A stretch of 64,000 nucleotides of DNA from Octopus sinensis (lineage: Eukaryota). Below are positions 37,707 to 64,000 of this stretch, one piece after another. Numbering within the stretch: the first letter of the stretch is position 1; each line of letters opens with the position of its first letter. The stretch covers positions 70,432,001 through 70,496,000 of the forward strand of contig NC_043006.1 of assembly GCF_006345805.1 (NCBI RefSeq). The letters are read 5' to 3'. The notes below the pieces were generated by a model. The model was given only the letters and a program-made list of their open reading frames with translations. It was not told the origin of the DNA and made no database searches. The translations under genes were made by a program, and so were the position numbers.

Positions 37707-37753
37707 GGATGACATACAACTGTCTTCTTTCTTTCTTTCTTTCTTTCTTTCCT

Positions 37754-37823
<70 letters not shown>

Positions 37824-38101: not shown

Positions 38102-38143
<42 letters not shown>

Positions 38144-39788: not shown

Positions 39789-39821
<33 letters not shown>

Positions 39822-40177: not shown

Positions 40178-40214
<37 letters not shown>

Positions 40215-40639: not shown

Positions 40640-40682
<43 letters not shown>

Positions 40683-41089: not shown

Positions 41090-41460
41090 GTGCATGCATA
41101 ACTGTGGTAAGAAGCTTGCTTCCCAACCACATGGTTCTAGGTTCAGTCCCATTGCATGGCACCTTAGGTGTTTTCCATTATAGCCTCAGACCAACCAAAG
41201 CCTTGTGAGTGGATTTGGTTGATGGAAACTGAAAGAAGCTCATTGTGTGTGTGTTTGTCTGTCACCGTCATTTGTTAGTTACTATTGGTGTATTTACATT
41301 GCCATAATTTAGTGGTTCGGTAAAAGAGACTGATAGAATAAGTATCAAGTTTACAAAAAAAAGTAAAATAAGTCCTGGGGTTGGTTCATTTGACTAAACA
41401 TTCTTGAAAGTGGTGCCCCAGCATGACCACACTCTAATGAGTGAAACAAGTAAAAGATAC
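41090..41460 (+). mobile_element. SINE-A; further plus-strand pieces 41620-41780, 50540-50760 and full copy 61257-61745
   Basis: SINE-A consensus. Confidence 0.88.
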
Positions 41461-41776
41461 AGATTTGGAAAGAATTCAATGCAAAAAAACAAAAAAAAAA
41501 AAAAACAGAATTCTAGGGCATAGACGATGCATGGGTGTCAGATGCACTCCAATTCAACAGCACATATGCAAGGAAAGAGGTTTTTAATGCATTAAAGCAT
41601 GTAATATTGAAAGCAACTACAGGCTTAGCTGTGTGGTAAGAACCTTGCTTCCTAACCACGTGGTTCTAGGTTCAGTTCTACTGCATGGCACCTTGGGCAA
41701 GTGTCTTCTACTATAGCCTCAGGCCAACCAAAGCCTTGTAAGTAGATCTGGTTGAAGGAAAATGAAAGAAGCCTGT

Positions 41777-41834
<58 letters not shown>

Positions 41835-41913
41835 CATACACACATACATACATACATATATATAATTGTTCAAGAGGACAACAAACATTAAGGCAAGGCA
41901 AACATCTCATTTT

Positions 41914-42153
41914 GTACATTATTTACATTTGATGGATATTTGTCCTCATCTCATTTGTTGTTACCACAATGTTTCAGCTGATATACCCTCCAGCTTTCAT
42001 CAGGTGTCTTGGGGAAATTTCGAACCTGGGTTCTCATTCCTAAGGTATTTTTCGATGTTATTATTATTATTATTATTATTATTCAGGTCACTGCCTGGAA
42101 TCGAACTCGGAATCGTGGGGTTAGTAGCCCGCGCTCTTAACTACTACGCCATA
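41914..42153 (-). mobile_element. Full-length tRNA-headed SINE with (AAT)n linker and hammerhead-bearing Penelope-like tail
   Basis: Minus strand: A-box TGGCGTAGTAG (42141-42151), B-box AGTTCGATTCC (42097-42107), (AAT)n, then GACAC-CTGATGA-A-AGCTG..CAGCT-GAAAC-ATT-GTGGT (41963-42008). Confidence 0.85.
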
Positions 42154-43082
42154 TGACTGTATTGCAAGTCCTATTTGAGATGTTTGCCTTGCTTTATGTT
42201 TGTTGTCCTCTTTGACAATTGTGTATCTGCTGCATTGGAAATCTGCAATGGCTCCATAACTACCATCTCGGCTATAACCTTGGAGCCCTAGTGATCTGTT
42301 ACAGCACTTATCTAGTGTATCTAATCGCTTAGATTACCCGTGATCTAAACTACCATACTTTGTACACACACACATTTATATTTATCTGTGTGTCTTTGTG
42401 TCTGTTTGTCCCCCACCACAGCTTGGCATCTGGTGTTGGTATGTTTACATCCCCAAAACATAACAGTTCAGCAAAAGAGACCAACAAATTGAGTTTCAGG
42501 CATATAAAAAAAATAGTACAGTGGTCGATATTGTCCAACTAAACCCTTCGAAGCAGTGCCCTGGCATGGCCACAGTCCTAAAATGAAAGCAAGCAAAAGA
42601 TAAAGAATTCATTAGAATACTCTTTTACTCTTTTACTTGTTTCAGTCATTTGACTGCAGCCATGCTGGAGCACCGCCTTTAGTCGAGCAAATCGACCCCG
42701 GGACTTATTCTTTGTAAGCCCAGTACTTATTCTATCGGTCTCTTTTGCCGAACCGCTAAGTGACGGGGACGTAAACACACCAGCATCGGTTGTCAAGCAA
42801 TGCTAGAGGGACAAACACAGACACACAAACATATACATACACATACATACATATATATACATATATACGACAGGCTTCTTTCAGTTTCCATCTACAAAAT
42901 CTACTCAAGGCATTGGTCGACCCGAGGCTATAGCAGAAGACACTTGCCCAAGATGCCACGCAGTGGGACTGAACCCAGAACCATGTGGTTGGTAGGCAAG
43001 CTACTTACCACACAGCCACTCTTGCGTCTATAGGAACTTTACTGAAATATTTCGTGACAGGCCTTGATTCTTCAAGGCCTCA

Positions 43083-43115
<33 letters not shown>

Positions 43116-43966
43116 GCAAAAATAGTGTTATCAAGAAAAGTCACATAATCAATTTAAAGACAAAGTCTTCAGCAATGCAATAATGTTAATACCTAGTCAT
43201 AGATACGAGCCCCAGCAAACATTGTACAGTCCCAAACCACAACTAACAAGTTAAACCCCACTCAGTAATATTTTTTCTACTCTACGCACAAGGCCAAAAA
43301 GTTTTGGGGGAGGGGGCCAGTCAATTAGATCGACTCCAGTGCACAACTGGTACTTAATTTATCAACCCGAAAGTATGAAAGGCAATGTCGACCATGGTGG
43401 AATTTGTACTTAGAATGTAAAGACAGATGAAATACTGCTAAGTATTTCGCCCAGTGTGCTAACGATTCTGCCAGCTTGCTGCTTTGCTCCACCCCCACTC
43501 AGTAATTTAACAACATTGAATTGTCTTTTGGCTGACCCTGCAATGATCATAAATTTTGACTGTTATTTAGCCCTAGGTCATTACCAAATCCGACAGACTT
43601 AAGACTAAAAATATTCCAGCTGTGACCATCTAGTCAGATATAATATACTTCAGGCTTACATTTTGCAATGTCATTCTTTTTAAAATACTCTTTTATATGG
43701 TTGGAAGATGATTTGGTTGCTGTTTTTAGCAGGTCAAAAGTCTATATTGTGGCCCTTTCTCTCCCATTAGCTCAAGTATAAATCATCATCATCATCATCA
43801 CCATCATTTAATATCCGCTTTTTCATGCTTGCATGGGTTGGATAGAATTTATTGAGGCAGATTTTTTTATGGCTTGATGCCTTTCTTGTTGCCAACCCTC
43901 ACCTATTTCCAAGCAAAGCATTATTTCCCTATAGCCAGACATGTTTATCACTGAGACTGGAAATGG

Positions 43967-44002
<36 letters not shown>

Positions 44003-45635
44003 CACACACACACAGTGGGCTTTCACACAGCTTCTGTCTCCAAATCCATTCACAAGGCTTTGATCGGCCCAGGGCTATAGTAGAAGACACTTGCCCAAGG
44101 TACGATGCAATGGGACTGAATCCCAGGCTGCATGGTTGGGAAAGCCATGCCTTGCAGAATGTTATTGTTTTGTTTTATCCCAAAGTTTGCTTTAATCCAG
44201 CAGATCCATGAAATAATTTATTATGGTAGCAGGGTGTAATTTCAATCCATGGAAAAAAATACAACATTAAATGGTGACAATGATGATGATGATCATGATG
44301 ATTTAGCTGTTATTTTTAGAAGGCTGAGTGGCTGTATAACTTCTCTTTCACTTGAACTCATTACTATATTATTGTTGTTGTTGTTCTGACCATGTGTGTT
44401 TTAGATGTTGTTGTTGTTATCATCAACACGCTACATCCAACGGTTGAGTCATTCTCTTTTATGATCAATGAAATTATTATTATCCTCCACCTATAGACAA
44501 CATCTATCCCAAAGTCATTCACACCTTCCACTCTGTGATATAACACAGCGGGTGGGGTGTAATATCTCAGAGATTTCCCTTGGATAGGGTTGGAAATGAT
44601 TAAAACAAAGATATTTCTATTGTGAAGTCATGTTTAATACATCATCCCTCCGCTCACACAACACACACACACGCATACACAATTATACACAAACTCACAC
44701 ACGCACACATGTGCACACACACACGCATGCACACATACGCACAAACTCACACATACACACACAAAGAAACACTCCTCCCTTTTTTTGTACCTGCCTACTC
44801 GTTACTTACTACCTTGTCATTCACCTTCTCGCCCGCCCCTCCCCGCAATGCTTGTATGTGTATATAAATCTGTGTATTTAAGTGTGTTTATATGTACTTA
44901 TATGTCTGTGTATCCTGGTGAGTGTATGAATGTATGTGTGTATATTCGTTTACATAATTAACCTATATTTGATATCAATTTAAGGCAGTGAGCTGGCCGA
45001 ATCGTTAGCACATTGGACAAAATGCTTAGCAGCATTTCTTCCAGCTCTCTAAGTTCTGAGTTCAAATTCTGCCAAGGTCAACTTTGTCTTTCATCTCTTT
45101 CGAGGGCCAATAAAACAAAGTACTTGTCCCCTCCCTCAAAACCTTGCAATGGACCAGCATCCTGTTCAGAGGATTGTTGTGTTTTTGGTCACTTACATCA
45201 TGGAAATTAGGTAACTGTCCTTCTGAGTCTTCTCTCTACCACACTACACATGATTCCTCTTATAGTCAGTTTTTCCCTCAATTCACTCGTGTTCTATCAA
45301 TCATGAAGATTAACATTACACATCCAGTTGTGCACTTCATTTCTTTCCTGCTTTTGTAAATTTTCCACATTCTTGTCATCTAGCATAAAGTTACCTCCTT
45401 CTGTACTGTAGCCCTACTCAGTAGATCTTTAGTCTTACAAGATAATGAATGGTGACCTCACTTGTGCTGGTGTCACAAGGAAAGTACCCAGTACAAACTG
45501 TTAAGTGGTTGGCATTAGAAACGGTGTCCAGCTGTATAAACCATGCAAAGTGAATTTCTGAGCATGACACAGTCCTTCAGCACATCAGATTCTGTCCAAT
45601 CATCCAACGCCTGTTTTCTATGCTGACATGGAGAA

Positions 45636-45800
45636 CATGTTAGATATAGATTTATGTCCATATCCACAACAAACAAATCAACATGTGACTGCTGATGCAT
45701 GGTGCTAATGATCAAAAGAACTGATGCAAATGTTAAGATATGGATTTATGTCCATATCCACAACAAACAAATCATGGTGCTAATGATCAAAAGAGCTGAC
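45636..45800. repeat. Local tandem duplication (about 95-bp unit, second copy internally deleted)
   Basis: atttatgtccatatccacaacaaacaaatca and atggtgctaatgatcaaaaga each occur twice. Confidence 0.9.
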
Positions 45801-46324
45801 TTGCACGTAATCAGTGTATAAGAAGCAATACAAATATATTCGCTTCAATTCCTGATAATGAGGCTGTGAAGGTCTAGAAATGTCATGGATTTAAGAAATA
45901 CTTTTCCAAACCATTTGTAAAACACTAATAAAAAATATAAAGAATATAAAAAAGATAAAACTTGAGCATATTTGCATATTTACTGAAATACATATGTATG
46001 CAAGTATAAATATATATATGTCAGTGTATATACATGTATATAAATATGTGTGTGTATGTGTATGTATAGGATATTGTTTGTATGAGCGAGGTTTACAAAA
46101 ACAAAGTAAATACTATGTATTGTATTCTTTATTAATTAATATGTTGACAAAATTTAATTCTAGTTTGATTCTAGGGCAAACCTGGGCCCAAGATATATAA
46201 TTAAAAATACACTTTAAGTACAGGATATCACCAACGAGTGAAAAATACGTAATACACAGAGATAAGTACAAGACAAAATACCAAAGGAAGATAACTCCTC
46301 TTTAGTTGTCGAATATATATACAT

Positions 46325-46357
<33 letters not shown>

Positions 46358-46369
46358 TATAATTATATA

Positions 46370-47246
46370 CAGGGTACAGTGAATAAACTGTCATCTAAAT
46401 TACGCAAAAATGAAAATAACACTAACATTTCATTGATGTTATATAGCAGATGTATTTAACAAAATTACATAAACAATATCTGGAAATACGAAATAGTAAA
46501 TTTATTCAATAAAATCGTCATTGGCTTCAATTACAGCTTCCAGATGACTTCAGAGCCTCCTACAACTTTTCTGGATGGTCTCCATATTTAAGTTGGTGAA
46601 TGCTGCCATAATCCTTGCCTTCAGTTCATCTTTGGTGTTACAAGGAGTTTTGTTGGCCTCTTGCTCAACTGTGCCCCACACGTAATAATCAAGGAAGCTG
46701 CAGTCTGGGGAGTTAGGTGGCTAGATGTTAAAGGTGATGTGGAAATTGTCTGACAGCCATGACTAGGTTCTCCTGCTTGTGTGGCATGGTGCAGAATCCT
46801 GTTGCTAGACATAGGGTGTTCCAGCAGCCACCCTCTTGACACAGGGCAGCATTACCACCTCCAGGCACTTGATGTAGGCCTCTGTGTTGAGTCTGAGGCT
46901 GTGTGGGAAGATGAATGGAGGCATAACATCACCATCACTAGTGATTACTCCAAACATCACGATGTTGACTGGATGTTTGATTTTTATCAAACATCCAGTA
47001 CATATCCTCAAATTGACACCCAAACACTCTGAAATGTTGGTATTGGAACTTCTGGTATGATGCCAAGCAGTACATCATGTCATTTCCAAATTTCTGACAG
47101 TGTGGATTGCGTCATGGTGCTGTTCTTCTTACAGACAGTGCCCAACTGACCCTACTATACTGTGTAGTTGACAAAATCAAAAACAAACAATGTGCGTGTG
47201 TGAAAGTAAAAATATAAAATGGTGACAATTTACCCATCGCAACCTA
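46370..47246 (-). mobile_element. Degenerate maT (DD37D-type) Tc1/mariner transposon
   Basis: TA-flanked imperfect TIRs; minus strand VMFGVITSDGDVMPPFIF..YV*QQDSAPCHTS..I*PPNSPDCSFLDYYVW. The D-D gap is 35 residues here, presumably after a 2-codon deletion. Confidence 0.8.
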
Positions 47247-50200
47247 TATATAATATGAATTTAATGTTTGCATGGTTGTATGTCTGTTTTTCATTACAAA
47301 TTATCCAAGCTATCCCATAATTCCGTCTATCCTTTGTCTATAATTTAATACCTATCTCTATTATTCCCACTGTTCACAGACCATACTAACAAACTGCTAC
47401 ACTGATATATTTATTTGGCCATTGTCATTCAACTGGACATATTTATGTTGGTTTTGTCTTTGGACTGCTTTAAGGCCAGATTCATTATTAGAGTGGTAAC
47501 AGTGCAGCATCTCTCTCTCTCTCTCTCTCACGCACACATACACACACATGCACAAAGGCATACAGTCATACACCTTTCACAGTATGTCTGTCTTGTCTTC
47601 TCTCTGCTTATCTCTCCTCTGTATATCCAACCGTTTGTTTTTCTGACTTTCTACCTATCTATCATATCTGTTGTATATCTCGTTATCTCTCTCCATATGT
47701 CTTTCTATCTCTGTCTGTGTTCATCTGTTTCTGTATTTGTCTGGATGTTTGTCTGCCCAGCTATTTGTCTACTTCTCTCACACTTTCCTCCTCTATCACC
47801 CTCACATCTATCTGTGTGTGTGTTTGTGTGTGTGTATATATATATATATATATACATACATATATATATAGGTGAGAGAGTTGGTATGTGAAAGACTTGG
47901 TATATATATATATATATATATACTTATGTATGTATGTAGAGAATCATGTGTTATATTGAAACCATGAATCAGATCACGAACATGAATGGATTGAGAAATA
48001 AAATAGTTCTGAGAGGGGAAAGTTAAGACTGATTGTTTTAATAAGGAGACACAAGGTGTGTGGTGTGTGTGGGGGTGCGGTTGAGCTTTATAAATGTCGG
48101 ACAAAAGATCTTTTCTCCAATTTCATCTCAAGAAACACTTTTGTGTATACAAAATATTGTTTATATAATATATATATATATACACGCACACACACACACA
48201 TATATATATCCAGCTTACAGATATATATATATATATACGTATATATCAACATCTGTCTATCTATCTATTTATCTGTTTGTCAGTACATGCATGTGTGTGT
48301 GTTTGTATGTGTGTTCATTTGTTTGTTTCATGTCTTTTTCTATCCTGGCATGGATTAAGTAGATATTATTGCAGTATTATCTTTTACAACTGGATGTCCT
48401 CCTTGTCCACTGATCCTCACCTGCGCATACACACTACCCTGTCCACTCCTACACTACAGCCCTTCTGCACACCTTGCTGTCAAATATCTACCAACATGGA
48501 AACACACACATACTCTCACTTTCTTTCTCTCTCTCTCTCTCTTTCTTACCACTCCCCACACATATAAAAGAAATGTATATATCACCAACCACACTGTCAA
48601 AGGTACACATGTGAGCTAATGTGTGTGCCTCTCTCTGGGTGCGTGAGCTATTAGAAACAGTAGCCAAATCTTCCTCAAATCATGCCCTGTCTACAAAATC
48701 AAACATGGCCACATTGGATAACATCACTGATCTGCAGATGTTGTGCTTGATTCTTGTAGAAACACAGTGATTCCAATGAAGCAGTTGTCCAGGCTCATCT
48801 TTTCTCTGTTGAGCTTCCATTTAGTCATAGGTCCTTTTATTCTAGTAATTTCTTCCTTCAAACTGATCTCTAAAACTCATTACCATCATCTTGTTTTCCT
48901 CTGGTCTACGGTATTCAAACCTTTAACCCTTTAGCAATTAAACCAGCCATATCTGACCTAAATAGTCATCATCATCATCATTGTCGTTCAACTGACTGGG
49001 GGCTGGCAAGCCAGAAGGCTGCACCAGGCTCCAATCCGATCTGGTAAAGTTTCTACAGCTAGATGTCCTTTTTAACACCAACCACTCCAGGAGTGTAGTG
49101 GGTGCTTTTTACATGTCACTGGCATGAGGGCCATAGAGGTGGTACTGGCATCGGCCATGCTTGAATGGTGCTTTTTACTTGCCACCAGCACGGGACCAGT
49201 CAGCCGGCACAATGTTCAAACTAGCCAGGTATGGCCTCTCATACCTACCCTACGATCTCATTCTAATCATAAACAATCACATCATCAAAATCCCAAAGTT
49301 ACAAGCTAATCCATGGTAAATCTAAGACAGGGGCCTAAAATGCTGCTGAAACAGCCCTGTGTATGGGCTTGTGGTTGGAGAGAAGATCTCTGATGTTTGA
49401 GGTGAGGTAACATTGGCCAAGGGAAATATAAAAGGGGATGGTACATGAATAGGTCACAGATGTCCCTAAACAAGAGGCTGGTCTAGATGCTTGCAACAAA
49501 CGAACTTTGCTAAAAGTGCCCAAGGGCCAAGTGGTGATATTAAACTGGGCAATGTGGTGCACTGAGCACTAAAAAAAAAATAAAAAAATTGGAAGATACC
49601 CTAGAAGGGGGCTACATTAGATGTTAGAAACAGCAACAGAAAAATGAGGGGGAAAAGTAAAAATAAACTGAAATAATTATAGTTGGAACACCTTTCTGTT
49701 ATCTTGGAGTTCAACAACTCACAGACACATGAAAGGTCAAAATGTAAGTGGTACTCTTAAGAAAACAGTAAATCAGAAGTCCTCTCCATGGTCAGTGTCA
49801 GTACCTGAACAGAACTGTTGTTTTAATTACAGAAGTAATTAACAACAGCTCCGTAATTATATATTATATTATCGTCTTACAATCGGTGTTATTGTTTAGC
49901 TTCAATTTAGTCCTGATCCAGCTATCCTTGGGTCAAATGTGTCCAACCTGCAACCATCCCATCTAGTTTTAGGTACTGTATATCTAGGGCTACACTTATT
50001 GATATGTACTTCCCTTTTTAAGTTAGTGATGTGTGATTTGAAGGAGATTTGGCTGTTATTTCTAGCAGGCTGAGTGACCACCATAGAAGCTCATTTGCTG
50101 TCTCATCAACCTAGAATACTATTGTTGTTTAACCCCAGAGCTTTCCTAATGAAGTAGATTTATGATCAAATACAATCCATCTATGACCGTCCCATCTATT

Positions 50201-53061
50201 TTGTATTTCAGGGATGATATAGTCCTATATTTTTTATCAAAATGGTAGGTTGCGATTTGGCTGCTATTTCTAACTGGCAAAACTATTGCATAGAAATTCC
50301 TACAGTTTCACTGGAATTTAGTGTGTAGTGGTGGTGGCAGTGGTGATGGAGTAGTCTAGTGGTATTGGTGTGGCATATTGATGATGGAGTAGTAGAGTAG
50401 TGCGAAGGCGCATAGCTCAGTGGTTAGAGTGTTGGGCTCACAATCATGAGATAGTGAGTTCATTTACCGGGCTGGGCTGTGTGTTTATTTCACTTTATTT
50501 CATGTTGCTCCAGTTCACTCAGTTCATATATATATATGTACATGTGTGTGTATATGTTTGTGTGTCTATGTTTGTCCCCCCAACATCACTTGACAACCGA
50601 TGCTGGTGTGTTTACGTCCCCCGTAACTTAGCGGTTCGGCAAAAAGAGACCAATAGAATAAGTACTAGGCTTACAAAGAATAAGTCCTGTGGTTGATTTG
50701 CTCGACTAAAGGCGGTGCTCCAGCATGGCCACAGTCAAATGACTGAAACAAGTAAAAGAGAGTATAAGGTTTAATGTTTGGTTTGTCATAGCTGGGATGT
50801 CATATAAATGCATAGCTTAGTGGATTAGAGCATTGAACTTCTGCTTGCAATAAATATGAGTTCAGTCTCAGATTAAACATAAGCAGATATACATGGCATC
50901 AGATGTTTTACAGAAACTAAATAGTTCTATATATATTGTGTTATACTAGAGAAAAAAAGAAAAATACTTCCTTCTATAAACAACCAAATTTTTTTTTTAA
51001 TTGGTAAAAATTTTAGCTTTCAATGATATTAGGAAGGGCATCCAGCCATAGAAACCATGTCAGAGAAGACAGTGGAGCTTGGTGCAGTCTTCTGGCTCAT
51101 CACCTCTTGTCAAAACCATCCAACCCATGCCGGATCAGATGTTAAATGGTGATGATGATGATAGTGATTGACGAGTACACCAGACAAAATGCTTAGTGTA
51201 TTTCATTTGCCTTTATGTTCTGGGTTCAAATTCTGCTGAGATCAACTTTGCCTTTCATCCTTTCAGGATTGATAAATTAAGTACCAGTGTTTCACTGGGG
51301 TCAATGTAATCGACTAGTCCTCTCCTGCCAAAATTTCAGGCCTTGTACCTTTAGTAGAAAGGATTATTATTATTATTATTATTGAATGATCCTTCATGAT
51401 GACCTGATGAATACACCGTTGCTAAAACTGAATTTCAAAGAGTAGGAAACCTGCTTTTAGTACCACAAAACTAAAGATACTTCAGCTCTGGTCAATCACT
51501 GATCCTCTTCAAACTTCAAGGAAGTACAGGCATACTTCAATTTACATTGTTTTGAATTGCATCTTTTTAGATTTTTTTTAAAGAAATTAATGGAAAGAAT
51601 AAACCTTAATTTTAGTTGATTTATCTGACTCAAAAAGAACATATTTAAAAGCATAAAAATTATTTTAGAAAAAAACCCATGTAAACACCAATATTGAAGA
51701 GAAAATCAAATTAAATACATGTGAAAATATACACAAAGTATTTATTAAAATAGATATGTTAATTAATTTTCGTGTTTTTTCATGTTACTTTGTTTTTCAA
51801 ATTGAGTTGCATGTTTTGGAACCAATTACCATATCTGGGCTAGTGCTGCTACACACATGCACACACACATCCTAGATTATATCCAAAAGACCACATGACT
51901 GATTAACAAAGATTAACTCACCAACACACAACTACTGTATCAGACAGGCTGTTTTTTTCTGTTTTCTACTATTATTACTACTACTATTTTCGCCGCCACC
52001 ACCACCACCACCACTACTACTATACAGTCTCAGTTCCTAAGATCTAGCTAACTAAATACTTTTCTTCTCATCATCCTTCACAATCTCCCCCCACCCGCCC
52101 ACTCCTATACCAGATCCTAAACTAAGCACGATGTCCCATTTTCCCTGCAGACACTGACCTACAAATATGCTAAAACAGAACATCACCCGTCCATTTCATC
52201 ATCAGTCCGATCAGCCTAAGAGGGTCAGAAGAGGCTATGGACACAGCTCCCCTCTGAATAACAAATCAATCTTTAACATTTAGGCATTTGTCTATTCTAC
52301 TTTGCAAGCCATTATGAAGGTCAACAGTTGGTCAAAATCTCCAGACCGAACCAGCAGTAGACAGGAATGACCTGGATTTTGCAGTGAAATGACCAATTGC
52401 TTATCTACAATAATTCTATGAAAGATAACAAAGCAATGAGTTAATAGCAATAGTAGCAGACTGACCAAACCAATATGAATGGACATTAAATTATCTTATC
52501 TCTGTCTGTCCAGTTTTAGCAAAGATAGAATATAATTGCAGGCATCATTGAATAATGATTCTACCATTTAGGGCAATGTGCCAACAGTTACAAACCAAAA
52601 TATTAGGTTAAGGACTATATTTATTTCCTACTACCCTCCACCTCATTAACCATTCCAAAACACAATGTACTCCACTGTTTTCTGGCACATAATGTACTCT
52701 AATGTTTTCCAGTACGCAATATACTCTGTTTCCATTACACAATGTACTCTAAAGCATCCAGCACACAATGTACTCCACTATATCCAAGTGCACAATAAAC
52801 TTCAATGTTTTCCAGGACATTTATCTACTGTTTTATCCAACATTAAACTAAAAGTTAATGGGAGAACACAAGAACATTCTCTTCATATGTAGTCTATATT
52901 TTTTACTACTCACTATTTATAGACACTAGTATTCACTACAATCCTTTCTACTATAGACACAAGGCCTTAAATCTGTGGGGGAGGGGCACTATAATCAATA
53001 ATACTAACAACTATAGTCATATAGCTGTCATGAATGCTAACTACTATAGCTAACACGAATA

Positions 53062-53767
53062 TTAACCATTTCATTACTGTATTTATTTTGAGATGCTCTG
53101 TGTTTCTTTCAATTACTTTAAATATAACAAAGAATTAGTAAAATAACTTAGTTATCATTCAGCTAGTGTTAGGAACATAAATTGTGACTAAGGTTTGGTG
53201 GAAGATTTCAATTCAGAACTTATGAAAACAAGACATTTGTACTCAGAGCCAGAGCTGGTTTCAGCTGGGTTCGTATCAAAAGGGTTAAATTAATCATTTG
53301 TTAACCCTTTTGTTACCATATTTCTGTTGAGATGTTCAGTGTTTCCTTCAATTAATTTTAAATATAACAAAGAATTTAGTAAAATAACTTAGCTGTCATT
53401 CAGCTAGTGTCAGAAACATAAATTGTGACTAAGGTTTGGTGGAAGATTTTAATTCAAAACTTTCGAAAACAAGACATTTGTACTACAGAGCCAGAGGCAG
53501 TTTCAGCCAGGTTGGTATCAAAAGGGTTAAATTAATAAGTTGTTAACCCTTTTGTTACCATATTTCTGTTGAGGTGTTCTGTATTTCTTTCAATTAATTT
53601 TACATATAACAAAGAATTTAGTAAAATAACTTAGTTATCATTTAGCTAGTGTTACGAACATAGTGACAAAGGTTTGGTGGAAGATTTTAATTCAAAACTT
53701 ATGGAAACAAGACATTTGTACTGAGAGCCAGAGCCAGTTTCAGCTGAGTTGGTAACAAAAGGGTTAA
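53062..53767. mobile_element. Three tandem piggyBac-type MITEs (about 220 bp each, TTAA-flanked, CCCTTT TIRs) separated by 12-bp spacers
   Basis: TTAA at 53062, 53285, 53301, 53527, 53543, 53764; spacers ATTAATCATTTG and ATTAATAAGTTG. Confidence 0.9.
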
Positions 53768-54050
53768 TACTATAACTATCACCTATACTAACTGCTATGC
53801 CCATTGATACTAACTACTATAGCTGTCACCAATTCTAACTACTATAGCTGTCACCAATTCTAACTACTATAGCTGTCACCAATTCTAACTACTATAGCCG
53901 TCACCAATTCTAACTAATGTAGCTGTTGATACTAACTACTGTAACCATCAATTCTAACTACTGTAACCATCAATACTAACTATTCTAGCTATCACCAATA
54001 CTGACTATTACATCATCAATACTAACTATTATAGCTGTCACCAATACGTA
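53768..54050. repeat. 25-bp minisatellite (CTAACTACTATAGCTGTCACCAATT); degenerate units also left of the MITE array (52985-53060)
   Basis: AGCTGTCACC at 53821, 53846 and 53871. Confidence 0.92.
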
Positions 54051-55214
54051 CACTAGCATAGCTAGGGTGGGGCGGTAGGGGTGATCCACCCCAGGCAGCA
54101 CTTTTAAAGGGGCAACACTTTTGGGTCTGTTGTAGGCAATATGTATTTTTTGTGGAGTCTGGGGGTGGTAAACGGAGGGGTAGCCCCAGGCGGCACATGC
54201 TCTGGCTAAGCTAATGCTAACATAAAAGAGGATGTGGTGCATTATGTAAATTCTAGATGCAAACTAGTAAAGAAAAAGATGTGTTCAAATCCATAACCAA
54301 GTTCCCCAAATCTTAGATACAACATACAAACAATGGCACTTGCAAGTACCATATGTGTTTTATGTTGAGTATACCATGTAGCTTACATGGTATAAGCCCA
54401 CAGCCCTGCTAGACACTGCAGGTATATACTATGTAGAGTGTACTAAGGCCCACACAAATACACATAGCATGCATAAGTAAACTCTATTGACATATATAAC
54501 ATAAAGCAAGGGGCCCCAACCACCAGCCTACGGTTCATTTGGTACTCATTCACACAGAAAGAATACATTAGGTTTTGTTTTTTTCTGTTTTATCAAATAT
54601 TGCAGTCTGAAGGACGTTTTTGCACAATCTAATATTATAAATGTGAATATCAATGTGTCACACTTTTTCAACTTTACTCCTAGAAGCCACAGCCCAACAT
54701 GTCATATCATTTTGGAATCAGGCTGGTTCCTTGAGTAAATTAAAAACATTCTGGGTGGAATCCAGATCTGCAATCCTGAAGTTTTGGATTCCCAAAATTG
54801 CTATTGTTTTCGGCAATTTGTTTTTCATGACTTTTTGCGACAATTTTTCTAACTTGGAAATAAATTTTGGGATTAATCGAAATTAATTGCGTAATCCAGT
54901 GATTATTTTCGATGATTTTCTTTTTTGACTATTTGCTACGAATATGATCGTCATTGGGATATAACTCTGGAGAAAGCAATTGCCACAAATTCTCCAAAAC
55001 AAGTCAGAGTTCTGTTTGCAGATCTTCCCATTCAGGATCAGTTGCTTAAAAGCTATATACTAGCTTAAAATCTGCCCAATAGAGTAGCTTTTAAGCTAGT
55101 ATATATAATATATATGCTGACTACTTACCCTAAATTTAAAACCTTGTGCCTATAGCAGAAAGGTTTATCCTCCTCATCATCATCATCATAAGGGTAGTAG
55201 TTTAGTAGAATCGT

Positions 55215-56020
55215 TAAAGCAAGGCAGTGAGCTGGCAGAATCGTTAACACACCAGGTGAAATGCTTAGCGGTATTTCGCCTGCCATTACATTCTGAGTTC
55301 AAATTCTGCCATGGTTGACTTTGCCTTTCATCCTTTTGGGGTCAATAAATTAAGTACTAGTTGCGCACTGGGGTCGATGTAATTGACTTATTCCCTTTGT
55401 CTGTCCTTGTTTATCCCCTCTATGTTTAGCCCCTTGTGGGCAATAAAGAAATAAGAATTGTTAAAGCATTGGACAAAACTGCCTTACTGTATTTGTCCTG
55501 GTTCTTTATGTTCAATACTCTCTGAGGTTAATTTTGTTTACCATTCGTCTGGGGGTTGAAGGCCTATAAAATAAAATACCAGTCATGTATTGACATTGGC
55601 ATAATTAACTGCCCCTCCCCTCAAAATTTCTGGCTTTGTTCCTGTGTTAGAAACAATTATCATCGTCATTGTCATCATTGCCATCATCAAGGCAGCGAGC
55701 TAGCAGAATCATTAGCACAGCATTTCATCCCATCTTTACGTTCTGGGTTCAAATTCCGCTGAGGTCAACTTTGCCTTTCATCCGTTCAGAGTCAATAAAT
55801 TAAGTAACAGCAAAACACTGGGCTTGATTTACCCCCTCCCCACAAATTTCAGGCCTTGTGCATTTAGTAGAAAGGATTATTTTTATTATTATTATTATTA
55901 TTATTATTAACAGGCAGTGAGCTGGCAGAATCGTTAGCACGCTGGATGAAACACAGCAGTATTTCACCCATTGCTACATTCTGAGTTCAAATTCTGCTAA
56001 TGTTGACTTTGCCTTTCATC
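55215..56020 (+). mobile_element. Three + strand SINE-C copies (55215-55460, 55690-55880, 55910-56020)
   Basis: ggcagtgagctggcagaatcgttag heads. Confidence 0.88.
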
Positions 56021-56414
56021 CAAGGCTCACCCAGAGACCTCAAGAGACAACAAGTTAGAAGTTCAATGTTGGTGTTATGCCTAGGGTGCCATATATTTGG
56101 TTTTGCACATAGTGTTGTTTTAGAGAATGTTTAAGGAACCATAAGAAAATTATAAGTTTGTTTTAACATTTGAGATTACATGGACAGTATTTTACGCAGG
56201 CAATGGCAGTTCCCATGAGCACTATCTTTTGAATTTCTGCCATTTTTGGGTTTCCTTGTTATCATTCCCTGGGCATCTATGACAACAGGTATTGTTTTAG
56301 TCTACAGGTTCTACATTTTGCTAATTTCTATTTTTTTTTATTATTATAATAATAATAATAATAATAATAATATTACTGCTATTACTAATACTGCTACTTA
56401 TAACAAAACATTAT

Positions 56415-56491
56415 AATAATTTTCTGTTTCTTTATTTCAGGTAAGTGTTTGGTTTGTCCTTCCAAAAATATATTGAATCTTTACTGTGAGT
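56415..56491 (+). other. Recursive splice site (ratchet point) TTTCAG|GTAAGT with a putative 45-nt cryptic exon 56441-56485
   Basis: tttctgtttctttatttcag immediately followed by GTAAGT; a second donor ACT|GTGAGT at 56486. Confidence 0.65.
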
Positions 56492-57257
56492 ATTGTCTGA
56501 CTTGCTTTCCTTACACTGTTCTTGCTTAACCCTGAGCCAGCCTTGATCAAGACTAATGATTAAAGCAATTTCAACTAAGACCACCACTTCAGACACAATT
56601 CATCTACTACTACATAAAATGAACTTCCTTTTCTTTTTAAGAGAGTAGGATGTGATTTGAGGGAGGTGTTGCTACTATAGCTAGCATATTAAATGACTGC
56701 ATATAGGCTCCTTAGTTCACTGTGAGATGTGTCTATTTATGTTTGTGTTTAGACACATAACTATTATACTCCCACACACACACACAGAGGTCTTGTTTTA
56801 CAAATAAGGTTTTACAATATATGTTTGTATATATGTGTGTGGGTGTACATGCATGTGTTTCACTCAAGTGTGAGTGGGCATATGCATATATAGCATGTGC
56901 ATATTTTAGACGCGTATTTGAATATAATTATGCACGTATAGGTATGTGCACATGTGTGTGTGCATGCATGTGTGCAGATATGTATATGTGTATATGTATG
57001 GTTGCATATATATGTGCATACATAGGCATATGTATGTGTGTGCATGTATGCGTTTCATGTGAGCATGCATGTGTATGTGTGTATATGTGCGCATAAGCAA
57101 TTTCTATGAGCATTTTTACTTTTTTTACTTTCTCCTCTTCAATTTTTTCCCCTTATTTAATGACCATTCTAATAGCTCTTTTGTCTTAATAACGGTCAAT
57201 TACATAGGAATTTCCCTTTGTTTAACGGTCACTTTCATAGCATCTTTTAGATTGTCT

Positions 57258-57320
57258 TGATAACTGATGAGATGCTGGAGCAGATTTCCGCCCCGACATC
57301 CAAAACTCGGAGTTTTATTA
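57258..57320 (+). ncRNA. Decayed type I hammerhead motif (G12 to A)
   Basis: Stem I TGATAA/TTATTA; CTGATGA 57264-57270; long eroded stem II GATG..CATC; C-AAAA-C in place of C-GAAA-C; stem III ACTC/GAGT; GUU. Confidence 0.5.
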
Positions 57321-57350
57321 TGGCAACCGAATAATTGTCACATATATTAC

Positions 57351-57386
<36 letters not shown>

Positions 57387-57403
57387 ATACATACACACAT
57401 ATG

Positions 57404-57443
<40 letters not shown>

Positions 57444-57588
57444 CACCTGCCTTCGTCTTTTGTTTATTTCCGTAAACCTGCCTTCGTCTTTTGTCTATTT
57501 TCATAAAGCTTCCCGTTATATATATATACACACATACACATATGTATATATATATATGTATATATCTATCTATCTATATATATATATA

Positions 57589-57953
57589 CTAGCAGTATCG
57601 CCCGGCGTTGCTCAGGTTTGTAAGGGAAATAACTATAAAGCATTTTTAGAGAGTTATAGCCAAAAAATGGAAAAAAAATGATGGTAAATTTTTTTTTTAG
57701 TTAAAAAGGTCGAGTTGCGTCCCCTAGACAGTCTGTGGTTTGTGTTTCTGATTCTCGACCCCATGTTGAATTTATCGATTTTTTTCAGAACTGGGGGAAC
57801 TTTTCAAAATTTTCGGTGCGTTAGTTTTGAATTATGACATTGGGCTATGTGTGTGTCAAGTTTCATCAGAATCGGTTGAAAGCCGTGGTCAGGGTGAGGG
57901 TACAACCTGACAGACACACAGAAACACACACAGACAAACTGCCGTTTATATAT

Positions 57954-57958
<5 letters not shown>
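57589..57958 (-). mobile_element. Complete non-autonomous Helitron (370 bp)
   Basis: Minus strand A|TC start at 57958 and hairpin + GATACTGCTAG|T end at 57589; inserted in a TA microsatellite. Confidence 0.9.
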
Positions 57959-57996
<38 letters not shown>

Positions 57997-59025
57997 TACA
58001 TACACACACACACATATATATATATATATACATATACATACATATATGTGTATATATATATACACATACATATATATATCTATATATATATATATACATA
58101 CATATATATATATACACATACATATATATATATATATATATATCTATATATATATATATATATACATACATACATATATATATATTATATATATATATAT
58201 ATAATATATATATATATGCATGCACTTGTAAACAACAGTTTAGATTGATTGTGATAACAATCCCCACTACAAGAATTGGACAACTAACCTCTTTCTAACA
58301 CAGTCAAATACTGGCTGACAAGGAAAGAAAATGTGTGAATGTAGTTAATTGCAATAAGAAAAAGATATTACTAAAATTTCAGAAAGTGGTTATTTATTGG
58401 GGAATAGAAGAAAAGCAAATTGTGTGTTGTGTTGTACAGGAGTCACAATAGTAATTTCTTGATAAGGAGCCTCTGTTCAAAACATCGATGATTTTCTTTT
58501 CCTCAAGGTAAATTACATTTAGTTTTAATAACTACATTTTCTTTCGATATCATGCTATTTCCAATACAGATACACATTCAGTTTCTGTGATTCAAAATTT
58601 TGCTTTACTGGGTTATTATTAATACCCCACCTTTTCCTTCAGTCTTTCGTTTGACATCTCTCTTTCTCTTGCTCTCTCTCTTGTCTAATTTCCTCCCTGC
58701 TTTCTTCTGTTATTAGAGAAAAGACAACGGAAGGGGGAAGTCAGAGGAGATCATGTGAAGGTGGCAATGACCATCCTGTCATTTTGTGAATATGTAACAC
58801 TACATTATCTAATGTGTTCTTATTCAATGCTATGCTGAACTATCAAATATAACTATAGATTTTAGCCATCACTATTTATGATAGCCAAGTTGCTTCCAGC
58901 TGTTCATATATCAGTATTTTATCAATTGAACTAGCTGCCAAGAATGCATTATATATGCAAATAGGTCTACAAAATTCAAGCTCTCACTAATAGTGGTTTT
59001 ATAAGCAATGTCTCTAGGGATAGTT

Positions 59026-59093
59026 AAAGAGAGTACTCACTTGCTGATGAAGTCCCAATGCATGACTGAAACTAGTCCAGCTGATCTCTCTTT
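59026..59093 (+). ncRNA. Canonical minimal type I hammerhead ribozyme
   Basis: CTGATGA 59044-59050; stem II AGTC/GACT; GAAA 59068-59071; palindromic stem III ACTAGT; GUC triplet (cut after 59077); stem I TCACTTG/CAGCTGA plus distal AAAGAGAG/CTCTCTTT. Confidence 0.8.
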
Positions 59094-60639
59094 TTCTTTC
59101 CACAAAGATATTGTATGTAATATAAAGACATGATGTTTATATCTGTCTATACATACAATGTCAGTTAAAAATCTATAGATATATTCTGTACAAAATAACA
59201 TTGAAAAAAAATGCAGTTAATAAACCAGTAATATTCACAGTTAAAACAGTGGGATATGTTTTGAGTGAGATTTGACTGCTATTTCTTGCAGCTCACACTA
59301 ACCAATCACATTGTTGATTCTTCATTAGTTGTATGTTAGAAATTGCAATAGTAACCATAGTGGAATGGTGGCAATGATGATCATAGGTCTTCTGGGTAAG
59401 GGCTTACCCAGGGCTAAACAGCATTCGCGACAACTAGCACTACCACTATTACCAGGAATACAACCACCACAACTGCAATTACTACAATGATTACTGTTGC
59501 CACCACCAACACCACTGCTATTACCACAATTGTACCTCAGATTATATAACTGTTGATAATGAGTGCATCGTCCGAAATGTCAAGATCTCCCCCTCACACA
59601 TCTGTCACAGCAGTACTATCTCTACTACCCACCATCACAGCACCACTATGTACATAATTACTACTACCACCACCACTTCTACTATCACTGTTTCCATCGT
59701 CATCATCATAGTCATCATCATCATTACAGCTATAATTAACCCTACCACCATCACCAAAAATCACCTCCTCCTCCTTCACCGCCACCACCGATACCATCAT
59801 CCACGATTAACTACTTCATCATCACTACCGACATCACCTTTATCACCACACTGCTTCCATTACCACCACCATCATCACCACTACAAGCATCACCACCACC
59901 AACATCACTCCCATCACCACTACGACCAACATCATCACCACTATCAACATCATCATCACCACCACCATTACTAACATCATCTCTGCCACCACCACCACCA
60001 CGTCCAGTGTCCATAGCCCCACTCTAGTCTAATTAAATATAATTATTTTCCCAGACAGCTGGGGTTTTAATAATGTGGTTTCAACTGATGTTGGTATTGT
60101 TGTTGTTGTTGTTAGTGGTGGTGGTGTCTGTAACAACAGTGGGGGAGGTTGCATGGAGTTTGATTACATGGAGGTAGCGGTGTTGTATGGTGATATCTGT
60201 TACAGCAGCAGCATTATCAGTATTGGTGGTGGCGGTGGTGGTTGCAAGATTGTGTTAGCTTGGGTAATTAGTGCATGTGTGTGTGTGTGTGTGTGGCTGC
60301 TTGACATTTGAAGATCCTGTAATTATTCTCAAATAATGAGAATTCTTTCACTTTTCACTTTGGCTTAGCCTTTCTTCAGTGTTGCTCACACCAAAGTTTT
60401 GCAACAACAGCAGGCCTCTGTGAAGTCGGTCACCATGCCAGAAGTAGTAACCAAACACCCCTCTCTCTCTCTCATTGTTCTTACCCCCCCACCCCGTCTT
60501 AAACATCAAACACATTTCATGATGTTGTCCTAGATATATACAGAGCTATGGCTAGAATGTCTTTGATTAACATAGGTCTACTGGGTCAGGGACTGACCTG
60601 GGGCTAAACAACAATATTAAAGGTAATAATGATTTAAAA

Positions 60640-61504
60640 TTTTGGCACAAGGCCAGCAATTTCAGAGGAGGGGGCCTAAGTCAATGACATCAACCACAGT
60701 GCTCAACTGGTACTTATTTTATTGACCCTGGAAGGCAAAGTCAACCTTGGCAGAATTTGAACTCGGAACGTAAAGATGGACGAAATGCTGCTAAGCATTT
60801 CATCCAGCATGCTAACAATTCTGCTAGTTTAATAATAATAATAATAATAATAATAATATTCTTTTCTACTAAAGGCACAAGGCCTGAAAGTTTGCCGGAG
60901 GGGACTAATCAATTATATTGACCCCAGTGCGTAACTGGTACTTGATTTATCGACCCTGAAAAGATGAAAGGCAAAGTTAACTTTGGCAGAATTTGAATTC
61001 AGAACATAGCGACGGGCGAAATACCACTAAGCATTTTGTCCAGTGTCCTAACGATTCTGCCAGCTCGCCATCTTAGTAATGACGATAATAACGCTTTCTT
61101 TATTAACCACAAGTGTTGACAAAAAGGTCAAGGACAGTGCAGGACAATACAGAGTGGGTTTGCTTAAGAAGTGTCTATAAATATTAAAAAAAAAAGATGT
61201 AGCAAAAATATTCAGTGGTTTTTAGAAAAGGTACAAATTTATATAATGTTGATGGCGTAGGAGTGGCTGTGTGGTAAGTAGCTTGCTTACTAACCACATG
61301 GTTCCAGGTTCAGTCCCACTGCATGGTACCTTGGGCAAGTGTCTTCTACTATAGCCTCGGGCTGACCAATGCCTTGTGAGTGGATTTGATAGACGAAAAC
61401 TGAAAAGAAGCCCGTCGTATATATGTATATATATGTATGTATATATATATGTATGTGTTTTCCACCTGCCTTCGTCTTTTGTCTATTTTCATAAAGCTTC
61501 CCGT

Positions 61505-61541
<37 letters not shown>

Positions 61542-62315
61542 GTTTGTGTGTTTGTCCCCCAACATCGCTTGACAACTGATCCTGGTGTATTTACGTTCCC
61601 GTAACTTAGCGATTCGGCAAAAGAGACCGATAGAATAAGTACTAGGCTTACAAAGAATAAGTCCTGGGGTTGATTTGCTCAACTAAAGGCGGTGCTCCAG
61701 CATGGCCACAGTCAAATGACTGAAACAAGTGAAAAAGTAAAAGAGAGTAAAGAGAGAGAGGTGGCATTTATATTTATAATGTTGTTGTTGTTGTTGTTGG
61801 TGGTGGTGGTTGTGGTATTTCCAAAATGTTAAGAGAGGGTTTATAGAATGTTGACTGTTGTGTCAACGTTATATATAAATATTGGTTTCAAATGTTGTCA
61901 CAAGGGGAGAAAGTTCAGGAGAAGGGGTAAGTTGATTACATTGGCCCCAGTACACAACTGGTACTTATTTTGTCAACCCTCAAAAGGATAAAATACAAAG
62001 TTGACCTCGGTGGAATTTGAACTCAGAACTTAAAGATGAACAAAATGCCAATAAGCATTTTGCGCAGTATGCTTACAATTCTGTCAGCTTGCTGTCTTTG
62101 ACTTCAAATTTTGGTACAAGGCCAGGAATTCCTGGGGGAAGGGGAAGTTGATTACATCAACCTCAGTACTTGACTGGTACTTTATTTTAATGACCCAAAA
62201 GGTATGAATAGCAAAGTTGATCTCAATGGTATTTGAACTTGGAATATAAAGAGCTGGAAAAACTACCATTAAGCATTTTGTCCAACATGCTAATGGTTCT
62301 GCCAGCTCACCACTA
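60640..62315 (-). mobile_element. Four minus-strand SINE-C copies (60640-60830, 60855-61075, 61890-62090, 62100-62315)
   Basis: Reverse complement of the SINE-C consensus. Confidence 0.88.
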
Positions 62316-63012
62316 TAAACTGGTTTCTGATTTGTGCACAATGCCAGCAATTAGCTGATACTGTTGACCCCCAGAGGAAGATGGCTTTCCCCAATCCTCT
62401 CAGCCTTGTCTACTGCATGACCTCTTTCCCCATAGACACTACACAGAAGAATACCACTTGCCCTGCTTTGTTAAGGGAAGGTGGTCAGGCATTTCTCACA
62501 ATGGATTTGGCTTAGAGCTGAATTCATTCAAGCAAGGTCATTGCCAGTGCTGCACGACTGGTCCTTGTGCTGGTGGCACATAAAAGCACCCACTACACTC
62601 TCGGAGTGGTTGGCGTTATGAAGGGCATCCAGCTTTAGAAACTCTGCCAGATCAGATTGGAGCCTGGTGCAGCTATCTGGTTCGCCAGTCCTCAGTCAAA
62701 TCATCCAACCCATGCTAGCATGGAAAACGGACGTTAAACGATGCCGCTGCTGACGACCTATAGTAATCACTGATCCAAAAGCCCTCTGAAACAGGCTGGC
62801 TCGTTCATCATCATCAATGTCTAAAGTTACCTCAAGAATGTCCTTATTCTCACCATCAATAGATCTCTATTTTTTGCTCATATAGAACCTCCACTGAACA
62901 TATTGCTCTACTGATAGAAGGCAGTGAGCTTTTTACTTTAAATGTGACTGTTGTCTTTATCAAAGCCAGTGACCGTGTACGGCTTCCTGTATTGACTTGT
63001 GTGCATGCATGC

Positions 63013-63044
<32 letters not shown>

Positions 63045-64000
63045 ATGTGCACACATGTGTGATATAATGAATGTATTGTGTAGTGTGTGGAGGCACAATG
63101 GCCCAGAGGTTAGGGCAGTGGACTCGCAGTCATAGGATTGCAGTTTCAATTCCCAGACCGGGCGTCGTGAGTGTTTATTGAGTGAAAACACTTAAAGCTC
63201 CATGAGGCTCTGGCAGGGGGTGTTGGCGAACACTGCTGTACTCTTTCACCACGACTTTCTCACTCTTACTTCCTGTTTCTGTTGTACCTGTAATTCAAAG
63301 GGCCAGCCTTGTCACACTCTGTGTCACGCTGAATCCCCTCGAGAACTATGTTAAGGGTACACATGTCTGTGGAGTGCTCAGCTACTTGCATGTTAATTTC
63401 ACAAACAGGCTGTTCTGTTGATTGGATCAAATGGAACCTTCGTCATGTAGCGTGATATGATGTGATATAATATATTTTGTGGTGGGATAATAAGTTTGCC
63501 TTGTGTTGTGACAGCTGATATATTTTGTGTGTATATGATGTAATGAAATGCAATGCATGTGTATCTGATCTAAGTTGTATGGGTGTGTATATGTTGTGTT
63601 GTGATGCAATGTGTTGTATTTGTGTAATATAGTGTTGCAATGTAGTAACTGTATGGAAATTGCAGTTAAGATACCTGTGCCAGTGACATGTAAAAAGCAC
63701 TGTCCGAACGTGGCAGATGCCAGCGCTGCCTGATTGGCGTCCATGTCAGTGACATGTAAAAGCACCAACCGATTGTGGCCATTTGCCAGCCTCCCCTGGC
63801 CCCTGTGCTGGTGGCATGTAAAAAGCACCCACTACACTCATGGAGTTGTTGGCGTTAGGATGGGCATCCTGCTGTAGAAACACTGCCAGAGCAGACTGCA
63901 ACCTGGTGCAGCCTCCTGGCTTCCCAGACCCTGGTCGAACTGTCCAACCCATGCTAGCATGGAAAACGGACGTTAAATGATGATGATGATGATGATGATA

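What the first reader, a model, noticed from the sequence alone, without database searches (positions are those of the whole stretch)
56415..56491. Textbook ratchet point with a 45-nt cryptic exon
A 20-nt polypyrimidine acceptor abuts a perfect GTAAGT, and a second donor (GTGAGT) lies 45 nt later, the short cryptic-exon architecture of Drosophila ratchet points. The 45 nt are also open in phase 1 (GKCLVCPSKNILNLY), the same phase as the other two exons. It lies 22.5 kb after the 33948 site, a plausible subdivision of a giant intron, and is not within a recognisable repeat.
Basis: partly seen in the sequence, partly recalled or inferred. Interest (0 to 1): 0.8.

Follow-up and report, generated by a model that had tools for sequence, protein, structure and literature searches.

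The report
Unproven recursive splice-site motif, octopus intron
A textbook-looking "splice in, then splice out again" signal really does sit deep inside a giant intron of an uncharacterised Octopus vulgaris gene model, but nothing available here shows the cell uses it, so it remains a reasonable yet unproven candidate of an already known kind.

Summary
The sequence is as described. A T/C-rich tract (17 of 20) runs into CAG|GTAAGT at 56440|56441, a GTGAGT follows 45 nt later, and the 45 nt are open in one frame.

The context also fits. The 75-nt piece at 33949-34023 is an annotated coding exon of a + strand, 239-kb Octopus vulgaris gene model (73 aa, "hypothetical predicted protein"). Its other coding exons lie outside the window. 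The site is therefore 22.4 kb into an annotated intron of at least 30 kb.

The regenerated donor pairs with U1 far better than the +45 donor, which is the fly "cryptic RS-exon is skipped" arrangement. Similar Y-tract+AG|GTAAG sites occur three times on + (6282, 33947, 56439) and never on -. The nominal P is 0.002-0.005, with thresholds chosen after the fact.

Three points weigh against it:
- The host protein is an orphan with no homologue and no domain.
- The "same phase" argument fails, because inclusion would create a stop codon at the next junction.
- Roughly 1,000 such motifs are expected by chance per genome.

Conservation, junction reads and lariats could not be tested. My estimates are about 50% unselected motif with little or no use, about 30% genuine recursive site, and about 10% occasional poison exon.

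The parts
33949..34023 (+). Upstream annotated coding exon (75 nt) of the host gene model. It begins GTAAGC right after a pyrimidine tract plus CAG, and it ends CAG|GTAAGA.
   Evidence: phmmer hit P0001, residues 19-43, identical over the exon. tblastn places it at 33948-34022 on + at 100% identity. P0001 is the Octopus vulgaris hypothetical protein encoded by a 239-kb gene.
34024..64000 (+). Part of the annotated intron that follows the 75-nt exon (at least 29,977 nt inside the window); the candidate site lies 22.4 kb into it.
   Evidence: The next coding exon of P0001 (EWMRMTIKVPAMW...) is not in the window. The gene range is 239,016 bp.
56385..56401 (+). Candidate branch points: CTAAT (A at 56388, 52 nt upstream of the AG) and CTTAT (A at 56400, 40 nt upstream). 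There is no other AG in the last 80 nt.
   Evidence: Pattern scan. Read from sequence only; branch-point use is inferred.
56420..56440 (+). 3' splice-site-like element: T/C-rich tract plus CAG, with TT at -5/-6.
   Evidence: TT at -5/-6 is a stated feature of fly ratchet points (10.1101/006163).
56441..56446 (+). GTAAGT. After joining to an upstream exon ending in CAG it regenerates CAG|GTAAGT, a full 9/9 match to the U1 5' end.
   Evidence: duplex -11.8 kcal/mol.
56441..56485 (+). 45-nt putative cryptic RS-exon. It is not part of the annotated protein, and inclusion would create a stop at the next junction.
   Evidence: and the sequence of P0001. No isoform containing it was found.
56486..56491 (+). 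Second, weaker donor ACT|GTGAGT that could define the cryptic exon.
   Evidence: U1 duplex -5.2 kcal/mol.
6263..6289 (+). Weaker site of the same kind on the same strand (Y 14/20, CAG|GTAAGC, AG at 6282-83), 27.7 kb upstream of the 33948 site. It has an AG inside its tract and no strong donor just downstream.

Best explanation
This is a splicing-competent composite of a 3' splice site and a perfect 5' splice site. It lies in the sense orientation, 22.4 kb into an intron of at least 30 kb, in a 239-kb Octopus vulgaris transcript model that encodes only an orphan 73-aa ORF. It is not a coding exon. Most likely it is an unselected by-product of T-rich, microsatellite-flanked intron sequence and is used little or not at all. 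If the spliceosome does pick it up, the sequence predicts the path. The 75-nt exon (ending CAG) would join to 56441, with the GTGAGT at +45 providing exon definition. The regenerated CAG|GTAAGT donor would then outcompete the weaker donor, so the 45 nt would be removed with the rest of the intron and leave no trace in the mRNA. Shown here: the motif, the strand, the intron context and the relative donor strength. Inferred: everything about actual use.
For: - The octamer alone is at chance frequency. The full motif is expected 0.003-0.13 times per 64 kb, which is hundreds to about a thousand per 2.8-Gb genome.
- The acceptor tract directly follows an (ATA)9 / A+T-rich low-complexity stretch. 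On the + strand 2% of all 20-mers already have at least 17 pyrimidines.
- The host is an orphan. P0001 matches only itself among 5.8 billion clusters, has no Pfam domain, and is a single annotated product in the 239-kb range. Known ratchet points sit in conserved genes and are themselves ultraconserved (PMC8605326; 10.1101/006163).
- No annotated product contains the 45 nt.
- The open frame is expected 39% of the time, and inclusion would end in a stop codon.
Against: - Every sequence criterion of a fly ratchet point that could be tested is met.
- The site lies in sense orientation in a giant intron, 22.4 kb from the upstream exon; fly recursive segments average about 18 kb.
- Y-tract+AG|GTAAG sites occur 3 times on + and 0 times on -, against 0.2-0.25 expected per strand (nominal P 0.002-0.005).
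- One of those three sites is a used, annotated exon boundary.
Confidence: 0.5

Rival explanations
1. This is a genuine intronic recursive splice site (ratchet point). The giant intron would be removed in at least two steps through 56441. The 45-nt cryptic RS-exon would be defined by GTGAGT at 56486 and always skipped, because the regenerated CAG|GTAAGT donor wins. The sites at 6283 and 33949 may belong to the same stepwise scheme.
For: - The motif is complete: Y 17/20, TT at -5/-6, CAG|GTAAGT, an 80-nt AG-free zone and yUnAy candidates.
- The cryptic exon is 45 nt; fly cryptic RS-exons are about 50 nt (PMC8605326).
- U1 pairing is -11.8 versus -5.2 kcal/mol in favour of the ratchet-point donor.
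- The site is in sense orientation in an intron of at least 30 kb of a 239-kb gene.
- The 22.4-kb segment is within the fly range, which averages 17,953 bp.
- There is a strand-specific excess of similar sites, one of them an annotated exon start.
- The 45 nt are absent from the annotated product, as expected for a zero-nucleotide exon.
Against: - There are no junction, sawtooth, lariat or conservation data.
- The host model is an orphan with no homologue.
- Chance instances in the genome probably equal or outnumber real sites.
- The enrichment thresholds were chosen after seeing the data.
- Fly cryptic RS-exons are generally out of frame, whereas this one is a multiple of three. This is a minor point.
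Confidence: 0.3
2. This is an occasionally included cassette or poison micro-exon. The acceptor at 56440 and the donor at 56486 would be used, and the 45 nt would appear in a minor isoform, truncating the ORF or marking the RNA for decay.
For: The 45-nt piece has usable sites at both ends. Its length is a multiple of three and one frame is open. Inclusion gives a stop at the next junction, a property of vertebrate RS-exons and poison exons (deduced; PMC8605326).
Against: No annotated isoform or related protein of 40-128 aa contains it. The perfect donor at its own first base should outcompete the weak ACT|GTGAGT donor (donor-competition rule in PMC8605326).
Confidence: 0.1
3. The motif is carried by an old or low-copy transposable element whose other copies lie outside this window, so many identical pseudo-sites would exist in the genome.
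For: About 42% of the window matches other parts of the window. A SINE-like copy ends at 56021, and TE protein fossils lie on both strands. A preprint reports about 66% repeats in this genome (abstract of 10.64898/2026.03.03.709284).
Against: No second copy of 56022-56800 is in the window. No TE-like ORF is seen there.
Confidence: 0.08

Closest known systems
Drosophila intronic ratchet points with cryptic RS-exons (Ubx RP, kuz, Bx, luna; Duff et al. 2015; Joseph et al. 2018, 2021)
   Same: It shares the juxtaposed (Y)nCAG|GTAAGT with TT at -5/-6. It has a short downstream-donor-delimited cryptic exon (45 nt, against about 50 nt in flies). The ratchet-point donor is stronger than the cryptic-exon donor. 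It lies deep in a long intron, and the segment length is about 20 kb.
   Different: There is no evidence of use and no conservation data. The host is an orphan 73-aa model rather than a conserved long gene. The cryptic exon is a multiple of three. The organism is a cephalopod, for which the full-text search found no report of recursive splicing.
Vertebrate RS-exons in long neuronal genes (Sibley et al. 2015; Blazquez et al. 2018; cited from PMC8605326 and from my own knowledge)
   Same: The exon begins with a reconstituted 5' splice site, depends on a downstream donor for definition, and introduces a premature stop if included.
   Different: Vertebrate cases were defined by junction reads and sawtooth profiles, and are conserved. 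Neither property was testable here.
Expressed RS micro-exons such as Ubx mI/mII (51 nt each)
   Same: It is a short exon whose length is a multiple of three and which starts with a 5' splice-site sequence. The annotated 75-nt exon at 33949-34023 (starting GTAAGC) fits this class better than the 45-nt piece does.
   Different: The 45 nt are absent from the annotated product and would end the ORF. No conserved peptide exists.
Deep-intronic pseudoexons of giant introns (for example DMD; PMC7175933)
   Same: It is a good acceptor/donor pair deep in a very long intron with no known role.
   Different: Ordinary pseudoexons do not begin with a perfect GTAAGT immediately after the acceptor.

Membership tests
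Intronic recursive splice site (ratchet point) with cryptic RS-exon | Juxtaposed 3' and 5' splice-site consensus, (Y)n NCAG|GTAAGT | tested here: met
   Y 17/20, CAG|GTAAGT at 56438-46, TT at -5/-6 (motif definition).
Intronic recursive splice site (ratchet point) with cryptic RS-exon | Lies in sense orientation inside a long intron of a transcribed gene | tested here: met
   The upstream exon 33949-34023 belongs to P0001 on the + strand. The flanking coding exons lie outside the window, and the gene range is 239 kb. Caveat: this rests on one orphan gene model whose transcript support I could not inspect.
Intronic recursive splice site (ratchet point) with cryptic RS-exon | Downstream 5' splice site delimiting a short cryptic exon (about 50 nt) | tested here: met
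   GTGAGT at 56486-91, 45 nt downstream.
Intronic recursive splice site (ratchet point) with cryptic RS-exon | Regenerated ratchet-point donor stronger than the cryptic-exon donor, so the exon is skipped | tested here: met
   U1 5'-end duplex energies are -11.8 versus -5.2 kcal/mol. This is a proxy, not a splicing assay.
Intronic recursive splice site (ratchet point) with cryptic RS-exon | Strong evolutionary conservation of the AG|GT core relative to its flanks | not testable with these tools
   No cephalopod genomic DNA was reachable. Window ORFs are not in the protein collection and the metagenome scan was empty.
Intronic recursive splice site (ratchet point) with cryptic RS-exon | Exon-to-ratchet-point junction reads, sawtooth coverage and recursive lariats | not testable with these tools
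Expressed coding cassette micro-exon | Present in an annotated or predicted protein isoform | tested here: not met
   P0001 continues ...SSYP|E..., not ...SSYP|GKCLV.... The search with P0001 found no other protein of 40-128 aa.
Expressed coding cassette micro-exon | Keeps the reading frame open into the next exon | tested here: not met
   The 45 nt end in T, and the next exon must start with AA or AG (Glu codon split G|AA or G|AG). The result is TAA or TAG (deduced).

The most novel reading that the evidence does not exclude
A 239-kb Octopus vulgaris transcription unit would be spliced stepwise through regularly spaced CAG|GTAAG sites at 6283, 33949 and 56441, spaced 27.7 and 22.5 kb apart. 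The middle site would be retained often enough to be annotated as a 'coding' exon. This would be the first documented recursive splicing in a mollusc, and it would suggest that the repeat-expanded introns of cephalopods rely on ratchet points as fly and vertebrate long genes do.
Probability: 0.25. Interest if true: 0.55.

Novelty: new member of a known kind. Interest (0 to 1): 0.3.

Why it matters
Recursive splicing has been documented in flies and vertebrates. A full-text search found no paper reporting it in cephalopods; the only paper holding both terms is on fly and mammalian neuronal microexons and was not opened. Octopus genomes have very long, repeat-filled introns. A confirmed ratchet point would therefore show that the same solution is used in a third major animal lineage, and it would give a concrete locus for testing it.

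The mechanism itself would not be new, and the host here is an uncharacterised orphan transcript. The gain is therefore modest. The practical value of this check is that it turns the claim into a cheap test on RNA data sets that are already public.

Tried and rejected
1. The reading of the 45 nt as a coding exon in phase with its neighbours is rejected. The annotated protein skips it, inclusion gives a stop, and the open frame is expected 39% of the time.
2. The host gene being on the minus strand is rejected.
3. Membership of a repeat family present in the window is rejected. A self-BLAST shows no second copy of 56022-56800.
4. I tried to reach orthologous DNA through ORFs over or near the site. 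The homologue search with the minus-strand ORF 56435-56599 found nothing. Exact look-up of 10 window ORFs found none in the collection. An exact 29-mer scan of metagenome contigs gave 0 hits. Conservation therefore stays untested.
5. I searched for relatives or isoforms of the host protein and found only the protein itself. It has no Pfam family.
6. I looked for structured RNAs or tRNA-derived elements that could explain the site. There were 0 Rfam hits and 0 tRNAs.
7. One search failed because a search term was too short; it was repeated.
8. My by-eye reading of fragments at 681-863, 23332-23484, 35520-35720 and 46553-47074 as TE protein fossils got no Pfam support at E<=0.01. Only the Pif1 2B domain passed its threshold, and HTH_48 stayed below its cut-off.

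Full report
**What is in the sequence.**
Reading 56100-56800 and indexing it confirms the description. The tract TTTTCTGTTTCTTTATTT (56420-37) is followed by CAG, with the AG at 56439-40. GTAAGT follows immediately at 56441-46, and GTGAGT lies at 56486-91, so the enclosed piece is 45 nt. The 20 nt before the AG hold 17 pyrimidines, not 20. Only one frame of the 45 nt is open, giving KCLVCPSKNILNLY. Upstream there is no other AG for 80 nt. Two yUnAy branch-point candidates lie 40 and 52 nt from the AG, and positions -5/-6 are TT. TT at those positions is reported to be enriched at fly ratchet points (10.1101/006163). The tract sits just after an (ATA)9 microsatellite and A+T-rich low-complexity sequence.

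**Is it more than chance?**
- AGGTAAGT occurs once on both strands of the window, against about 2.3 expected, so the octamer alone means nothing.
- Requiring at least 15-17 pyrimidines of 20 brings the expectation to 0.003-0.07 per window in block-wise dinucleotide shuffles.
- Using the window's own count of acceptor-like tracts gives 0.02-0.13.
- A GTRAGT within about 100 nt downstream adds roughly a factor of 0.04.

The site is thus unusual for one 64-kb window. For a genome of about 2.8 Gb, however, this implies several hundred to about a thousand chance instances. The open frame is expected 39% of the time.

**What surrounds it.**
The window is A+T-rich eukaryotic DNA (GC 0.33-0.45). It is full of microsatellites and interspersed repeats, and 42% of it matches other parts of itself. 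It also carries a Pif1/Helitron-type helicase fossil (Pif1 2B domain, E 3e-7) and a weak mariner HTH match. There are no Rfam families and no tRNAs. The stretch 56022-56800 has no second copy in the window, and a SINE-like copy ends at 56021.

**The host gene.**
I joined the 75-nt piece at 33949-34023 to the 45-nt piece in silico and searched the 39-aa peptide against 1.84 billion representative proteins. The only meaningful hit was P0001 (73 aa). It matches query residues 1-25 at 96% identity (24 of 25), and tblastn puts its residues 18-42 at window 33948-34022 at 100%. It continues with E, not with GKCLV. A second, weak hit to a zinc-finger repeat protein is irrelevant.
- tblastn places only that exon in the window, on the + strand.
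- P0001 is encoded on a 119-Mb NCBI contig of assembly GCA_951406725.2, in a gene spanning 239,016 bp. No other called gene is listed in that range.
- Its sources name it "Hypothetical predicted protein [Octopus vulgaris]". It matches nothing but itself among 5.8 billion clusters and has no Pfam domain.
- The assembly is the chromosome-level O. vulgaris genome. Its models combine Iso-Seq and RNA-seq assemblies (PASA, TransDecoder), protein alignments and ab initio predictions. The median intron there is 2,467 bp (PMC10700109).

The candidate site lies 22.4 kb into an annotated intron of at least 29,977 nt, in sense orientation.

The strand and giant-intron conditions are met. The phase argument is not. 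The codon after the 75-nt exon is Glu, split G|AA or G|AG. The 45 nt end in T, so inclusion would give TAA or TAG at the junction. The frame itself belongs to an orphan ORF that may not be translated at all. No isoform containing the 45 nt was found. That absence fits both "always skipped" and "never used".

**How it would work if used.**
After the 75-nt exon (ending CAG) is joined to 56441, the junction reads CAG|GTAAGT, a 9/9 match to the U1 5' end (-11.8 kcal/mol). The donor at +45 is ACT|GTGAGT (-5.2 kcal/mol). In flies the cryptic RS-exon is about 50 nt and its donor is needed for recognition. The stronger ratchet-point donor then wins, so the exon never reaches the mRNA (PMC8605326). Fly recursive segments average 17,953 bp. 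On sequence, this site fits that scheme in every testable respect.

**An unexpected hint.**
I relaxed the motif to Y of at least 14 of 20 plus AG|GTAAG. The + strand then has three sites (6282, 33947, 56439), each preceded by C, and the - strand has none. The expectation is 0.2-0.25 per strand. Three or more on one strand occurred in 0.2-0.5% of composition-preserving shuffles. I chose the thresholds after seeing the data, so this is a lead, not a result. One of the three is the annotated exon, which itself starts with GTAAGC, an "RS-exon"-like start. The site at 6282 is poorer: it has an AG inside its tract and no strong donor just downstream.

**What could not be done.**
Conservation and RNA evidence are the defining tests. 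No cephalopod DNA or reads were reachable. ORFs of this window are not in the protein collections, and an exact 29-mer scan of metagenome contigs was empty. A full-text search found no paper reporting recursive splicing in cephalopods; the single paper holding both terms was not opened.

**Verdict.**
Set against that are three things: the chance background at genome scale, the low-complexity origin of the tract, and an orphan host with no homologue. Known ratchet points are ultraconserved elements of conserved genes. My estimates are:
- about 0.5 that the site is an unselected motif with little or no use;
- about 0.3 that it is a real recursive site;
- about 0.1 that it is an occasionally included poison micro-exon;
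- a small remainder that it is TE-borne.

If real, it is a new member of a known kind. Mapping RNA data that are already public would settle it.

Noticed in passing
window 33949-34023 (+): The annotated 75-nt coding exon of the O. vulgaris hypothetical protein P0001 itself begins with GTAAGC directly after a pyrimidine tract plus CAG, and ends CAG|GTAAGA. It therefore has the architecture of an 'expressed RS-exon'. The protein is an orphan (73 aa from a 239-kb gene), so the ORF may be spurious and the transcript non-coding.
   Followed up: partly
window 6263-6289 (+), with 33947 and 56439: Three Y-tract+CAG|GTAAG sites lie on the + strand at spacings of 27.7 and 22.5 kb, and none on the - strand. 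The nominal P is 0.002-0.005 in shuffles, with thresholds chosen after the fact.
   Followed up: partly
window 20109-20684 (-): This is a fossil of a Pif1/Helitron-type helicase. Pfam Pif1_2B_dom matches 20269-20493 at E 2.9e-7, and neighbouring open frames look like further helicase pieces by eye.
   Followed up: partly
window 31127-31682 (+) and 35520-36029 (-): These fragments look like mariner-type transposase (CQKWF-like and SDFHLF-like motifs by eye). Only a sub-threshold HTH_48 match (E 0.009) was obtained for 31127-31360.
   Followed up: partly
window 681-863 (-), 23240-23484 (-), 46553-47074 (-): By eye these open frames resemble a reverse-transcriptase motif (FQGDLLSPLLF), a non-LTR element C-terminal region, and a DDE transposase C-terminus. 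None reached Pfam E<=0.01, so this is an impression only.
   Followed up: partly
window 7637-7899, 17482-17744, 18894-19156, 41621-41883, 61259-61521 and inverted copies (e.g. 24149-24361, 39994-40189): This is an abundant interspersed repeat family of about 260 nt (76-91% identity between copies), present in both orientations and often followed by TA/TG microsatellites. ARAGORN finds no tRNA-like head.
   Followed up: no
window 5390-5799; 53062-53767; 53768-54045: There are three tandem arrays: a 38-nt minisatellite (10.8 copies, 91% matches), a 242-nt repeat (3 copies, 88%), and an adjacent 25/50-nt array.
   Followed up: no
window 28001-30000: There is a strong local GC skew (+0.39) and AT skew (-0.30), caused by TG-rich degenerate micro- and minisatellites (periods 51-108 nt).
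   Followed up: no
P0001 residues 45-66 versus window 30914-30976, 22746-22781, 25444-25479: The C-terminal part of the host protein (…KVPAMWRLTVIMMIMM…) resembles translations of the tail of a repeat family in the window (…QPMPAWKADVKMMMM…). This suggests that the last coding exon is repeat-derived. The similarity is weak (33% over 21 aa) and was not tested further.
   Followed up: no
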